From: Diadema antillarum | Lineage: Eukaryota | Assembly: GCF_040938485.1 (NCBI RefSeq) | Contig: NW_027271794.1 | Span: 62,001 to 126,000 of the forward strand | DNA length: 64,000 nt | Direction of reading: 5' to 3' | Shown here: piece by piece, positions 1,066-15,358 of the stretch | Position numbering within the stretch: position 1 is the stretch's first letter | How the letters are laid out: every line of letters starts with the position of its first letter | Position numbers and translations under genes: made by a program | The notes under the pieces: generated by a model | The model's input: the letters and a program-made list of their open reading frames with translations, nothing else | The model's database searches: none | What the model was told of the DNA's origin: nothing

Positions 1066-1146
1066 CTGCCGGACTGGGATCGAATTTAAATGCCGAAGAG
1101 GAAGACATGGCGTCAAAGCGATGGCATCATCTGTTTGGAAAGTGGG
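1066..1146 (+). CDS. Exon A, 81 nt (AAGLGSNLNAEEEDMASKRWHHLFGKW); copies at 4597-4677, 8141-8221, 11694-11774
   Basis: ttttttatctgaatttcag|CTGCC...AAGTGGG|gtaatt; open in phase 1, whereas phase 0 hits TAA. Confidence 0.72.
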
Positions 1147-4100
1147 GTAATTAAACTTTTTGCTTTTGCAGGTTTGAAAAAAAAAAAAACCCGGCTTCTT
1201 AAGTTATTTAGGTGCTCAAATGTGAAAGCGTTGATATTTTGTCTATTTCCATCTTTTAAAGCCGAGTTATGTCAAACAGCAAACTTTAGAGCGAGAGATC
1301 ACTTTGTATAACCGCGAGAAAGGTGCGGTCTTTCAAAAAGAACATGTGTGTTTTTTTATTATTATTGTTACTTTTCAATATGATATGAGTGGAATTGTTA
1401 ATACATAAAGACTCTGTTATAGACTCTGCTTCTTTCTTGCGCAAGAGCTCAAGTGACCCGAACTTTGGGAACTTAAAACTCGAGAAGTTTAGCGGCTATT
1501 GTGGACATTTTGAGACATAGTAATAAGAGCACTCACTGATGATTAAAGATGATAATCGATTCCTTTTCTGGGGGTTTATCTCTTCGCAAATTTTGTACAT
1601 TAATGAAGAAAGAAAAGATGATGATAACGCGTTTGTATATCATGTAAACAGAGGTAATCCGTTATCTTCTTGCGTATCAGCCAATGACGACTGTTCCATA
1701 TCATCTCATATATATTTATTGTATTTTTTTTCAAAAATTTAACTGCCAAACAGGAATAGCCAAATCGGGGGCGGGGAGCAAGGCGCAGTCTATGAAAACC
1801 CCGAATACATTACTAAACTTGTCTTACGTTATATGCTGTTATACTTCAAGCAAATGTATAGACTGGTGAACTGCATGAATAAGGACGCTTTACTGCTACT
1901 TCATTCAGCATAATTTTAAGGCGTTCCATTTTCTTGCCTTCTCTATCATATCTACTGCAGAACTGCATACCTGGGTTGGTACGTCATTCTTATAGCCCCT
2001 TTTATGTAAGGACTAACACGCAGAAAATCTCAAAAGTGTATTGAAAATGCAAGTTTGTACAGTGGTTATTTTGCTACATTATTTCCTTTCATCTGTCGAA
2101 CTGTATGCTCTCATTTTAGTTGCCGAACAGGATTTGTCAGAGCGGGGACAAGGCGATGTCTACGACAGAAGCTTGGGTATGCCACTCTTCTTCTTCTTCT
2201 TCTTCTTCTTCTTCTTCTTCTTTGTATGTGTGTGAAATAAGAGTCATGTAGTTTGAAGTGTGTTAGTCCCTCCCTGGTTAGTCGAACTTTATTGCGTATG
2301 TACATACATGTACATGTACTTTGTTTGCAATAAAAACAACATTACCGGCATTAAAATTTTCGACTTGTATCTTATTTCACAGCCGCGGTGGATTCTAATG
2401 ACCAGGAACTTTTGAAGAAGCTTCTGCTTCAGCTGAACTCAGGTGAGTTTGTATCGAAAATATCTTCAGGTATTTTAAAGTTCCTTTTATTTCCTGCCAT
2501 CTTACTACAGGAAGAATTGATAGACTAGTAAATTGCAGGAACGAAAAAGGGTTGATTCTTCCTTATTTCCCATTATTTTCAGACACTTTTTTTCTCTCTA
2601 TCTTTATATCTCTCTTTCTTTCTCCCTGCTTGCAAAATTGCATTCCTTGCCATGCATGTCTTTCCTTGCTCTCATAAAATGCCTAACACCCTGAAAGTTT
2701 AACAAGGATTGCTTAACGATAATGGTAAATATATAATTATATGTGTTTCTTATTCTTTTTCATACGTTGATTACTTGGATACAAAAGGATATTGGAAATG
2801 CAAGTTTGTACATTGGTTATATTGCTACTTTATTTCCTTTCATCTGTCGAACTGTATGCTCTCATTTTAGTTGCCGATCAGGATTTGTCAGAGCGGGGAC
2901 AAGGCGATGTCTACAACAGAACCTTGGGTATGCCACTCTTCTTCTCATTCTTCTTCCATTCTTCTTCTTCAACTTCTTCTTCTTCTTTGTGTATGTTTGT
3001 CTGTGTGTGTGTGTGTATGTATGTTAATCACTTGCTGTTATACTGCAAATACACGTAGAATCGCCAGCACTGATCGCCAGACTATGGATACTTCCATTGA
3101 CATGGACGCTTCAATTCTCTCTCATTTTGCATCATTTTAGGACGTCTTCTTATTTCTCAAAAACGTGTACTCAGTTGATAAACTTATATTAGCCGCATCC
3201 ACATTAAAAAAAAATCCCTGTGCTTATTTTCTATTCATTTATTCATTATTGCAAACGTTTTCACGGGGACAGAAATAGCTGGATAACGATCGCGGTCCAA
3301 TGTCGAGATTGTTTGCAAGCATTCACACGGGCAGATTAATATCCCGGTAATTTCTTCTTGCGGGTCACAGTGGTGTTGTGCGCAAAACGTTTCTTCTTGT
3401 TGTTGTTTTTGTGGGCAAATTGTGATGTATGCTTTGAATGATGGGATATAAAATCTCGACAATATATTTTTTTTTTTTTTTGTCAAGGGTTAGTGCTTAC
3501 ACGACCACCGCTGAAGCATTATGGGGGTAATTCAGAAATGAACGAAGTTTTTTTTCTTGGGGAGGGGGGATTTGCATCGCAATGCTGATCGCGATAATTG
3601 GTGTCACTTTTGTGGCCACACGAACAAAATCTCGAGATTTGTATCTCGCTAATTCGCGCATGTGTGTATCCCACTAATATGACTAGGAATCATTCTACTA
3701 TTTCTATAACCTGATTTTGTTGTTATTATTATTGTTGTTGTTGTTGTTGTTGTTTTGACATTTCAGCTGTCGGCGTGAGATCGCCAATGCACAGCGGTCA
3801 CAGAATGAAAGACATTTCACTTTTTTCAGTATTTGCACGTGCGGTTCGAAATGAACCGCTTAACGCTAAAGGTAATACTCCATGGGAATGCTTTGATAAT
3901 TCTTGAATTTCGGGGGGGGGGGTATTATGTCTCCCTTGTTGTATATCTAATGGCAGACTGCATTTTGTGTACATCGGTATTACGTTTTTCGTCCTTGCTT
4001 TAACAGTTGTAACGATTAACACGTGTCATGTTAGTCTGATGAGTATGTAATCTAATAGTTTTGATATATATCGAGAGCATCACTGTAAGGATTCTTATTT

Positions 4101-13926: not shown

Positions 13927-14001
<75 letters not shown>

Positions 14002-15358
14002 TTGTACAACCACGAGAAAGGTGTGGTCTTTCAAAAACTACACGTGGTTTTTTTTTCATTATTTTGTTACTTTTTATTATAATTTAATTGGAACTATTAA
14101 TACATAGCCTACTTCAAATATTACCATCATTTGAAGATGTTGAATATTTCCTAAATCATTCATATCGACAGGGAGAACTGCTCCTTGCAAAGACATTTTG
14201 AGATTTATCTTTTATTTATTCATCATTACAAGTATTTTCACGCGGACAAAAATAGCTGGATAATGATCGCGATCTAGATATCGAGATTTGAACTGCTGTT
14301 TGCAAAGATAATTTCTTTTTATTCACTCTTATCTTAAAACTAAACAATGGAAATATAACGAACATAATAATCTAATACATGTAGTTTTATATCGTCATAA
14401 ATAGTGACGGTATTATCTATCATTAATTGTCACATTTTCTGTCTTAATCCGAGATTCTAAACGGTTTTCAAATTTTGACGCTAAGAGGAATTCGTCAAAA
14501 CGATGGCTTGGCGGTACTAGAATGATGTCATGCATTTTATTTCCTACCTACTTGCAGTTAATATAAAAAGCTAAAGTAGTGAATTGCTCATGTGGGAATG
14601 TGTTGACCTTAACTCGGTTCTTATCTCTTGAACTGTGTTATTTTTTAGCCTTTATGAATACTGAACGGGAATCTATGGTTTTTTTTTACCATATTGGTCC
14701 TACGTTTTAACACGTAACGATTAAGATTTCTCAACCTAACGGATATTATGATTAGATGTCTTGATGTTGTGAGTATCAATGCAAATGTTCGTATTAAATA
14801 TTATCAATTTTAGGTGCCAGAGATTACTCGTTTAACCCCGAGGAAGGTTTTGCCCGCGGCGGTCGAAGTCATTAAGGTAGTTTTCATCCCTGTATACATT
14901 TTCAAGTAATTTGAAGAGAATTTTTAAGATACCATATCCCATCCTTATCCGTGATTCGAATACGTTTTTGATATTTTGTATTTCGTCCATATGAGATGGA
15001 AGGACCGGTATTTGCCCGGATTTGAGTCGTCCTCATTTTCCCTTATTGTCATGTTCGTAAGTAATAATATTTGTTTTTTTATTCTTCTTATTCTTATGTC
15101 ATTTTTTTTCTTTCCCGGTTTGGGAAGATGAACTACCTGTCCAGATACCAATCTGTTCTTTGCTGTTACCCCTTTGCTTTATGGATACTATTCTGTATAG
15201 AATGTCATGTCAACAATTCTTGGAAAAATTCCCTTAACTTCGAAACTTTTCGTTCCTCTTAATTTTCTTTTTCCTTCATTGAAGCTGCGGGACAGTACTC
15301 CTCGAAGAAAAATGGAGATGCCGATTTCGAAAAGCGTCCTGGCGTTCTCTATGAATGA
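1066..15358 (+). CDS. Multi-exon gene (5' end outside the window) encoding a repetitive peptide-precursor-like protein; about 349 aa in the window if all called exons are joined
   Basis: 18 internal exons with polypyrimidine-AG acceptors and GT donors. All have lengths divisible by 3, are phase 1-1 and are open in the joined frame. A terminal exon ends in TGA. Unit translation: AAGLGSNLNAEEEDMASKRWHHLFGKW-ELHTWV-VAEQDLSERGQGDVYDRSL-AAVDSNDQELLKKLLLQLNS-VADQDLSERGQGDVYNRTL. The splicing is predicted; there is no transcript evidence. Confidence 0.72.
1961..1978 (+). CDS. Micro-exon B, 18 nt (ELHTWV); copies at 5490-5507, 9033-9050, 12536-12553
   Basis: ttttcttgccttctctatcatatctactgcag|AACTGCATACCTGGGTTG|gtacgt; strong sites, symmetric phase 1. 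Confidence 0.62.
2120..2176 (+). CDS. Exon C, 57 nt (VAEQDLSERGQGDVYDRSL); copies at 5649-5705, 9192-9248, 12695-12751
   Basis: ctctcattttag|TTGCC...AGCTTGG|gtatgc; symmetric phase 1; paralogous to exon E. Confidence 0.75.
2383..2442 (+). CDS. Exon D, 60 nt (AAVDSNDQELLKKLLLQLNS); copies at 5930-5989 and 9482-9541 (Q>H variant)
   Basis: cttatttcacag|CCGCGG...AACTCAG|gtgagt; consensus acceptor and donor, symmetric phase 1. Confidence 0.8.
2871..2927 (+). CDS. Exon E, 57 nt (VADQDLSERGQGDVYNRTL); copies at 6416-6472 and 9969-10025
   Basis: ctcattttag|TTGCCGATC...ACCTTGG|gtatgc; duplicate of exon C with three amino-acid changes. Confidence 0.75.
12830..14900. repeat. Older, diverged and rearranged copies of parts of the tandem unit (intron sequence)
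   Basis: Recognisable but diverged blocks: cacagcggtcacagaatga (13650), gttcgaaatgaaccgct (13702), gagaaaggtgtggtctttcaaaaa (14015), aatagctggataatgatcgcga (14250), gccagagat (14816). Confidence 0.75.
13925..13996. repeat. (TA)n/(TG)n microsatellite. Others: (CTT)n after exon C in each unit, (TA)n at ~18470 and ~27560, (GT)n at ~12800 and ~34380
   Basis: Seen directly in the sequence. Confidence 0.95.
15285..15358 (+). CDS. Terminal coding exon (AAGQYSSKKNGDADFEKRPGVLYE-stop), homologous to exon A
   Basis: aattttctttttccttcattgaag|CTGCGGGA...TAT GAA TGA; phase-1 entry; shares the AAG..S..N....D...KR pattern with exon A. Confidence 0.62.

What the first reader, a model, noticed from the sequence alone, without database searches (positions are those of the whole stretch)
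1066..15358. Hidden gene built from a tandem array of micro-exon cassettes, invisible to the ORF track
The 3.5-kb satellite-like array looks non-coding. Yet each unit holds five exons (81/18/57/60/57 nt) with consensus splice sites that all keep phase 1 and join into an open 91-aa repeat. A homologous exon with a stop codon closes the gene at 15358. Changing the array copy number would change the number of peptide modules in the protein. I do not recognise the protein. Seen: splice sites, phases and open frame. Inferred: that the exons are actually spliced together.
Basis: partly seen in the sequence, partly recalled or inferred. Interest (0 to 1): 0.85.

Follow-up and report, generated by a model that had tools for sequence, protein, structure and literature searches.

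The report
Repeated micro-exon cassette gene, sea urchin
A 3.5-kb DNA unit repeated at least four times in this sea urchin carries tiny exons, and an annotated gene in a sister species joins matching exons into one small protein of unknown function, so the "satellite" is most likely the repetitive body of a real, fast-evolving gene found only in this group.

Summary
The array is real. Units of 3.53-3.56 kb start at 1, 3533, 7073 and 10630. The fourth is cut short after exon C, and the array runs off the window's 5' end. Units are 98.6-99.7% identical.

All five reader exons (81/18/57/60/57 nt) have AG/GT sites, are phase 1 and read open in every copy.

Independent support: a search with the 81-nt exon found one protein among 1.84 billion, XP_072179070.1, "uncharacterized protein [Diadema setosum]", 141 aa. 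Its seven exons are the same cassette types in the order A-C-D-E-A'-A''-T.

Between the two species:
- All splice sites are kept.
- Exon indels are in frame (6 and 3 nt).
- Exons are 87.6% identical and flanks 81.2% (P=0.003).

- The 18-nt exon is not in the sister model.

No transcript data for this genome could be reached. The 5' end lies outside the window and the function is unknown. The protein has no Pfam match and no confident fold. A peptide-precursor reading is weak, because the KR site is missing from two of three sister-species A-type exons.

The architecture is of a known kind (schistosome micro-exon genes, LPA-type intragenic cassette repeats). Interest is moderate.

The parts
1..12760 (+). 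Tandem array of a 3.53-3.56 kb unit. Copies start at 1, 3533, 7073 and 10630. The fourth ends after exon C at a (TCT)n/(TG)n tract. The array runs off the window's 5' end.
   Evidence: four copies, 0.3-1.4% substitutions between copies, the edge copy most diverged
1066..1146 (+). Exon A (81 nt, phase 1-1), peptide AAGLGSNLNAEEEDMASKRWHHLFGKW. Identical copies at 4597-4677, 8141-8221 and 11694-11774.
   Evidence: The peptide is identical to D. setosum exon L001:9960-10040. Nucleotides match at 79/81 against 87% in the flanks.
1961..1978 (+). Candidate exon B (18 nt, ELHTWV). Copies at 5490-5507, 9033-9050 and 12536-12553. Unsupported.
   Evidence: Good AG/GT sites here. Not in the D. setosum model. 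The sister sequence has the acceptor context ...cagag| and is not more conserved than the intron.
2120..2176 (+). Exon C (57 nt, VAEQDLSERGQGDVYDRSL). Copies at 5649-5705, 9192-9248 and 12695-12751.
   Evidence: Counterpart in D. setosum is L001:11083-11139, 88% nt identity, core AEQDLSERGQGDV invariant.
2383..2442 (+). Exon D (60 nt, AAVDSNDQELLKKLLLQLNS; best donor, CAG|gtgagt). Copies at 5930-5989 and 9482-9541 (one Q-to-H change).
   Evidence: D. setosum D exon L001:13224-13277 is 54 nt (in-frame 6-nt difference), 67% nt identity.
2871..2927 (+). Exon E (57 nt, a paralog of C with 3 differences). Copies at 6416-6472 and 9969-10025.
   Evidence: D. setosum E exon L001:15638-15694, 88% nt identity.
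235..339 (+). Candidate sixth exon F (105 nt, phase 1, open; its first codons resemble exon A). Copies at 3767-3871, 7309-7413 and 10865-10969. Probably not an ancestral coding exon.
   Evidence: Its counterparts in D. setosum and in the decayed copy at 13625-13722 lack the GT donor and are frame-shifted.
12761..14520 (+). Old, decayed part-unit (72-82% identical to the array unit). It holds a frame-shifted F relic (13625-13722) and an exon-A relic (14468-14506) that lacks the array copy's acceptor region.
14814..14876 (+). Exon T (63 nt, phase 1, GARDYSFNPEEGFARGGRSH then TAA at 14873-14875, followed by G|gtagtt). It is the ortholog of the last coding exon of the D. setosum model.
15285..15358 (+). 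It is conserved in D. setosum. It may be an alternative last exon or 3' UTR sequence.
   Evidence: 70/74 nt and 23/25 codons identical, acceptor AG kept. ATTAAA at 15534 is the first poly(A)-type signal after exon T in this genome.

Best explanation
The array is the repetitive body of one real protein-coding gene restricted to Diadema-type sea urchins. Each 3.5-kb unit carries a cassette of short, phase-1 symmetric exons: A, C, D and E for certain, with the 18-nt B and the 105-nt F uncertain. Because every exon starts and ends in phase 1, any number of units, or any subset of exons, joins without breaking the frame. The number of units therefore sets the number of 85-91-residue modules. The window alone would give a 320-348-residue, 5'-incomplete product (pI about 4.7, hydrophilic) with no predicted stable fold. 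It would end in exon T (14814-14876) or, if T is skipped, in the exon ending at 15358.

A unit-based layout is older than the split from D. setosum, because the sister locus still shows the same pieces in several decayed, partly deleted copies. In this genome the units have recently been amplified or homogenised, presumably by unequal crossing-over or gene conversion.

The protein is probably secreted. This is inferred only from a candidate signal-peptide first exon 7.3 kb upstream of exon A in D. setosum, and from the phase-1 design typical of extracellular modular proteins.

Shown: the array, the sites, the phases, the open frame, the annotated ortholog, the conserved sites and the in-frame indels. 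Inferred: splicing in this genome, secretion and function.
For: - Array and exons.
- The only hit of exon A among 1.84 billion representative proteins is XP_072179070.1 of D. setosum (E=1.1e-14, three matched stretches).
- Its exons map to L001 as A 9960-10040, C 11083-11139, D 13224-13277, E 15638-15694, A' 16619-16690, A'' 17276-17356 and T 18356-18421. All have AG/GT sites and are phase 1.
- Every AG/GT site at A, C, D, E and T, and the acceptor of the closing exon, is conserved between the species, although flanks differ by about 19%.
- Exons are 87.6% identical and flanks 81.2% (Fisher P=0.003). Exon indels are 6 and 3 nt only, against 24 mostly out-of-frame events in the flanks.
- Exon A has 79/81 nt identical.
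- All four 81-nt A-type exons (this genome's A and the sister's A, A', A'') keep their length and open frame at 77-78% nt identity between types.
- No RNA family or tRNA in the unit.
- The unit has no other copy in the remaining 51 kb of the window.
- Candidate signal-peptide exon L001:2671-2737, with a TATA-like box upstream and a strong phase-1 donor.
Against: - No transcript or protein evidence from this genome was reachable.
- The sister model is a computed RefSeq (XP_) model, and I could not inspect its RNA support.
- Its CDS starts at a Met inside exon A and has no signal peptide, so either it is 5'-incomplete or the protein is not secreted.
- Where the cassettes differ, changes fall evenly on codon positions 1, 2 and 3, and nonsynonymous changes dominate. 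Exons D and T are no better conserved than introns. Purifying selection on the protein is therefore weak or patchy.
- The conserved cores are purine-rich (GAAGAGGAAGA and similar). They could be conserved as splicing enhancers and not for the peptide.
- The array copies are so young that their intact frames say nothing about function.
- No relative was found outside Diadema.
Confidence: 0.68

Rival explanations
1. The gene is real in the lineage, but the array in this genome is a recent, neutral or damaging intragenic amplification. In that case the extra cassettes would be skipped, would trigger decay of the transcript, or would sit in a gene that is no longer used. Copy number would then have no effect on any working protein.
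For: Units differ by only 0.3-1.4%, so intact exons are expected whether or not they are used. The 3' end of the array is followed by a decayed unit with broken exon relics. The A' and A'' exons of D. setosum are missing here. No model of this gene from this genome appeared in the protein libraries.
Against: Every exon copy keeps its sites and frame. The downstream exons T and 15285-15358 are intact and conserved. The symmetric phases mean amplification does not break the frame.
Confidence: 0.15
2. The locus is not protein-coding. On this reading it is a spliced non-coding RNA, or chance pseudo-exons in a local satellite, and the D. setosum protein model is a by-product of automatic annotation.
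For: Substitutions between cassettes show no third-position excess. There is no Pfam family, no fold and no relative outside the genus. The sister model starts at an internal Met. The conserved blocks could be splicing signals.
Against: The same frame stays open in 15 exon sequences of two species, including paralogs only 77-78% identical. The other frames carry stops. The only exon indels are 6 and 3 nt. Exon lengths are all multiples of three with one shared phase. A stop-bearing terminal cassette ends on ...RSH-TAA in both species.
Confidence: 0.1
3. The gene is a multi-copy peptide precursor. On this reading each A exon supplies an acidic spacer, a KR cleavage site and a short Trp/His-rich peptide ending in Gly-Lys (WHHLF-amide after processing), so the array multiplies peptide dose.
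For: Exon A reads ...NAEEEDMAS-KR-WHHLF-GK-W and is nearly invariant between the species. The closing exon also has KR at the aligned place. There is a candidate signal-peptide exon in D. setosum. The same reading appears in an earlier first-reader note.
Against: KR is replaced by QF and RF in the A' and A'' exons of D. setosum, and the sister model splices out the Lys-Trp of A'. There is only one dibasic cleavage site per 85-91 residues, and the rest of the unit has no cleavage logic. There is no similarity to any described peptide, and a literature text search found nothing. No signal peptide has been shown.
Confidence: 0.12

Closest known systems
Schistosome micro-exon genes (MEGs), including the tandemly repeated 81-base exons described by Davis et al. 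1995 (reference 10 in PMC10526429)
   Same: The coding region is made of very short exons, up to 81 nt and multiples of three, separated by much longer introns. The products are small, show no recognisable domain and evolve fast. Automatic annotation has trouble with them (PMC10526429; PMC4350168 abstract).
   Different: There is no sequence relationship. The host is a deuterostome, not a flatworm. Here a whole multi-exon cassette of 3.5 kb is the repeat unit and is more than 98.6% homogenised. The signal peptide that defines MEG products has not been shown.
Intragenic multi-exon cassette repeats such as the human LPA kringle IV-2 repeat or the NBPF Olduvai triplets (from my own knowledge, not checked here)
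   Same: A kilobase-scale unit holding more than one exon is repeated head to tail inside one gene. The units are nearly identical and are in frame, so copy number sets the number of protein modules.
   Different: Those cassettes encode folded domains, whereas these encode short segments without a predicted fold. Copy-number variation between individuals has not been tested here.
XP_072179070.1, uncharacterized protein of Diadema setosum
   Same: It is the ortholog. It has the same cassette types, an identical exon A peptide, the same phases and the same terminal exon ending in RSH.
   Different: The sister locus has one diverged copy of each of A, C, D and E, plus two extra A-type exons, instead of a homogenised array. 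It lacks the 18-nt and 105-nt candidates.

Membership tests
Micro-exon gene (MEG-type) architecture | Most of the coding region lies in exons of at most 81 nt whose lengths are multiples of three | tested here: met
   Exons are 81, 18, 57, 60, 57 and 63 nt, all phase 1. The D. setosum exons are 54-81 nt. The definition is from PMC10526429.
Micro-exon gene (MEG-type) architecture | N-terminal signal peptide, secreted product | tested here: inconclusive
   The 5' end is outside the window. There is a candidate signal-peptide exon in D. setosum (L001:2671-2737), but it is not in the RefSeq model, whose CDS starts inside exon A.
Micro-exon gene (MEG-type) architecture | Sequence kinship with the schistosome MEG families | tested here: not met
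   The only relative found is the Diadema ortholog. There is no Pfam family. This is therefore an analogy of design, not membership.
Micro-exon gene (MEG-type) architecture | Protein variation by alternative use of the symmetric exons | not testable with these tools
   This needs transcripts. The only hints are the alternative donor used in exon A' of the sister model and the two possible last exons.
Intragenic multi-exon cassette repeat (LPA KIV-2 type) | Head-to-tail, near-identical units that each hold several exons of one gene, with unit coding length in frame | tested here: met
   There are four copies at 98.6-99.7% identity, and the coding length per unit is 255-273 nt. That they form one gene is inferred from the sister model.
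Intragenic multi-exon cassette repeat (LPA KIV-2 type) | Copy number differs between individuals or haplotypes | not testable with these tools
   Only one assembly stretch is available, and the array is cut by the window edge.
Multi-copy neuropeptide or peptide-hormone precursor | Signal peptide plus repeated peptides, each flanked by conserved basic cleavage sites | tested here: not met
   There is one KR cleavage site per unit before the peptide and only Gly-Lys after it. KR is absent from the A' and A'' exons of D. setosum. The signal peptide is unproven.
Multi-copy neuropeptide or peptide-hormone precursor | Similarity to a described peptide family | tested here: not met
   No protein relatives were found. 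No paper contains the peptide strings.

The most novel reading that the evidence does not exclude
A deuterostome counterpart of the flatworm micro-exon genes. This would be a secreted protein found only in this lineage, assembled from a homogenised array of five-micro-exon cassettes. Unit number (by unequal crossing-over) and exon choice (by splicing) would tune a family of short cationic Trp/His peptides released from acidic spacers. The peptides could be neuropeptide-like (WHHLF-amide) or antimicrobial-like, in a region that also holds Ig V-set receptor genes.
Probability: 0.13. Interest if true: 0.65.

Novelty: new variant of a known kind. Interest (0 to 1): 0.4.

Why it matters
The finding shows that a stretch which looks like a 3.5-kb satellite, and is blank on an ORF track, can be the body of a real gene. 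It also gives a clean natural example of a multi-exon cassette array in which all exons share phase 1, so length can change without frameshift.

The two Diadema species capture two states of the same locus: a decayed, single-copy-like exon set, and a freshly homogenised array. That contrast is useful for studying how repeat-built genes grow and shrink.

The practical result is a corrected gene model for this genome, and a probable 5' extension of the sister-species model. The biological weight is limited until expression, secretion and function are shown.

Tried and rejected
- **Sixth exon F (235-339).** It is open, phase 1 and has good sites. Its GT donor and frame are, however, private to the homogenised units. 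The decayed copy here and all D. setosum counterparts lack them. I did not accept it as an ancestral exon.
- **Extra candidate 3488-3526.** It has no support.
- **Hydrophobic in-frame ATG stretch just upstream of exons C and E.** It looked like a signal peptide, but the ATG and frame are not conserved in D. setosum. I read it as an artefact of translating the polypyrimidine tract.
- **A promoter and start exon in each unit.** No convincing candidate was found, so the array is not a row of separate genes.
- **Non-coding RNA arrays such as 5S, snRNA or tRNA.** There is no Rfam or tRNA hit.
- **Pfam, ESM Atlas and AlphaFold on the sister protein.** No family was found. The models are of low confidence (pLDDT 40-45), with only short helices.
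- **Longer or shorter relatives.** The search for homologous proteins with the 141-aa protein returned only itself in the 78-247 aa range. Longer products of this genome could not be searched, because a spliced protein has no reference.
- **Gene calls for this genome.** Two exact look-ups with the neighbouring 491-aa ORF found nothing on record. I could not extend the window upstream or see whether this genome is annotated.
- **Literature.** No paper contains the peptide strings.
- **Within-array comparison of exon and intron divergence.** It has no statistical power: 0-1 exon changes were seen where about 1.5 would be expected.
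Full report
**What is in the sequence**

The first 12.76 kb of the window is a head-to-tail array of a 3.53-3.56 kb unit. Copies start at 1, 3533, 7073 and 10630. The array reaches base 1, so it may continue upstream.

The copies differ by 0.3-1.4% substitutions, and the last copy is the most diverged. Their (TCT)n tracts differ in length (12, 18, 21 and 12 repeats). They are therefore distinct copies and not an assembly duplication.

The fourth unit stops after exon C at a (TCT)n/(TG)n tract. 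An old, 72-82% identical part-unit follows (12761-14520), whose exon relics are broken.

No Rfam family or tRNA lies in the unit. The unit has no other copy in the remaining 51 kb of the window.

All five have AG before and GT after in every copy, are multiples of three, and are phase 1. Together they read as an open 91-codon frame, while the other two frames carry stops.

Under a crude consensus score the sites rank in the top 2.4-15.5% of AG and the top 0-6.7% of GT dinucleotides of the rest of the window. The unit holds 12 phase-1 symmetric open candidates, against 0-6 in 26 control chunks. This is moderate evidence only, because I set the thresholds after seeing the exons.

I found a sixth candidate per unit (235-339, 105 nt). 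It opens with the same codons as exon A.

**Independent evidence from a sister species**

A phmmer search with the stop-free stretch around exon A (window:1059-1151) read 1.84 billion representative proteins. It found exactly one hit, at E=1.1e-14 with three matched stretches.

The hit is XP_072179070.1, "uncharacterized protein [Diadema setosum]", 141 aa, on chromosome record OZ188205.1. Mapped on its locus (L001), the exons are:

| Exon | L001 coordinates |
|---|---|
| A | 9960-10040 |
| C | 11083-11139 |
| D | 13224-13277 |
| E | 15638-15694 |
| A' | 16619-16690 |
| A'' | 17276-17356 |
| T | 18356-18421 |

All have AG/GT sites and all are phase 1. My scan, run unchanged on 15.7 kb of L001, recovers all six internal exons of that model and few other candidates.

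From my knowledge of NCBI's pipeline, a model with no protein relatives is normally kept only when transcripts support it. I could not inspect the record.

**Comparison of the two species**

The loci align at 70-88% identity in non-coding DNA. This fits two species of one genus. Earlier notes of this scan name this genome as D. antillarum; I did not verify that.

- Every AG/GT site at A, C, D, E and T, and the acceptor of the closing exon, is conserved.
- Anchored on the splice sites, exons are 87.6% identical (338/386) and 150-nt flanks 81.2% (1372/1690), Fisher P=0.003.
- Exons have two indels, of 6 and 3 nt. Flanks have 24, mostly not multiples of three.
- Exon A is 79/81 identical, and both changes sit at the acceptor end.
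- The core AEQDLSERGQGDV is invariant in three of the four C/E exons of the two species. The fourth, exon E here, has one Glu-to-Asp change.

Against strong protein constraint:
- Exons D and T are no better conserved than their introns.
- Differences between cassettes fall evenly on the three codon positions.
- The conserved cores are purine-rich, so they could be kept as splicing enhancers of very short exons.

I read this as a real coding gene whose product evolves fast outside a few short motifs.

1. The 18-nt exon is absent from the sister model. In D. setosum the acceptor context is ...cagag|, and the segment is not more conserved than the intron. It is optional or specific to this genome at best.
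2. The sister model ends in exon T. Its ortholog here is 14814-14876 (GARDYSFNPEEGFARGGRSH, TAA at 14873-14875). This is a 63-nt phase-1 cassette followed by G|gtagtt in both species.
3. It is A-like.
   - It could be an alternative last exon used when T is skipped, or it could be part of the 3' UTR.
   - In this genome the first ATTAAA after T lies behind it, at 15534. In D. setosum there is one at L001:18520, between T and that exon.
4. The 105-nt candidate F has a donor and frame private to the homogenised units.

**Evolution of the locus**

In unit coordinates, the D. setosum locus contains several decayed and partly deleted units:
- F-A-B-C, fused to the sequence that follows E
- F, then D and E, with A lost
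- F-A'
- A''
- an upstream D-type exon at L001:4824-4877

A unit-based layout therefore predates the split of the two species. This genome has recently amplified or homogenised it, since within-array divergence is about one tenth or less of the between-species value.

**The product**

Whatever mix of B, F, T and the closing exon is used, the frame stays open. The window encodes a 5'-incomplete 320-488 residues. Without F the range is 320-348 residues, with pI about 4.7 and GRAVY about -0.8.

The sister protein has no Pfam family, no Atlas neighbours and an Atlas model at pLDDT 0.40. Its AlphaFold model has mean pLDDT 45, with only short helices over the D-type and A-type cassettes.

A candidate first exon with a textbook signal peptide lies 7.3 kb upstream of exon A in D. 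setosum. It reads MNAVYCLIFIALAGNASA|ASKH, has a TATA-like box about 60 nt upstream, and has a CATG|gtaagt donor in phase 1. It is not in the RefSeq model, whose CDS begins at a Met inside exon A.

The 14 codons before that Met are identical in both species and are translated in the A' and A'' exons. I therefore think the model is 5'-incomplete, but this is inference.

**The peptide-precursor idea**

This idea also appears in a first-reader note on this window. It rests on ...EEEDMAS-KR-WHHLF-GK-W in exon A. KR is replaced in the A' and A'' exons of D. setosum, and the sister model removes the Lys-Trp of A'. The cleavage logic is therefore not a conserved feature of the cassette. No paper contains these peptides. 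I keep it as a minority reading.

**Comparison with what is known**

The design matches schistosome micro-exon genes: exons up to 81 nt, multiples of three, long introns, and small fast-evolving products (PMC10526429). That literature includes tandemly repeated 81-base exons. There is no sequence kinship, and the defining signal peptide is unproven.

The repeat logic matches intragenic multi-exon cassette repeats such as human LPA KIV-2 (my own knowledge). This locus is therefore a new variant of known kinds, in a new lineage, encoding an orphan protein.

**Limits**

- No transcript data were available for either species.
- The upstream end and the total copy number are outside the window.
- A spliced protein of this genome could not be handed to the search tools.
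- Exact look-ups of a neighbouring ORF found no gene calls for this genome.

Noticed in passing
window 19762-21237, 28997-30709, 56075-57964 (minus strand): Three paralogous intron-less ORFs for type-I membrane proteins, each with one Ig V-set domain, a Thr/Ser-rich stalk, a transmembrane segment and an acidic tail. The middle one is split into two ORFs (28997-29629 and 29657-30709), so it is either broken or has an intron.
   Followed up: partly
window 39797-42596 (minus strand) and 44267-46321 (plus strand): There is a non-LTR retrotransposon with endonuclease (Exo_endo_phos) and reverse-transcriptase ORFs. A second copy is fragmented and frame-shifted.
   Followed up: partly
window 32761-33306: A 21-nt minisatellite is open in several frames on both strands (for example repeats of AIFTS on the minus strand and GKNGR on the plus strand). 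It is probably non-coding.
   Followed up: no
L001 2606-2737 (D. setosum): This is a candidate unannotated first exon with a TATA-like box, a canonical signal peptide and a strong phase-1 donor. It lies 7.3 kb upstream of the RefSeq CDS start of XP_072179070.1. An unannotated D-type exon at 4824-4877 lies in between. The sister model may be 5'-incomplete.
   Followed up: partly
   Followed up: no
window 14468-14506 and L001 about 17990-18040: An old relic of exon A, without the array copy's acceptor region, is conserved at about 90% between the two species in the intron before exon T. It shows that cassette turnover at this locus predates the split of the two species.
   Followed up: partly
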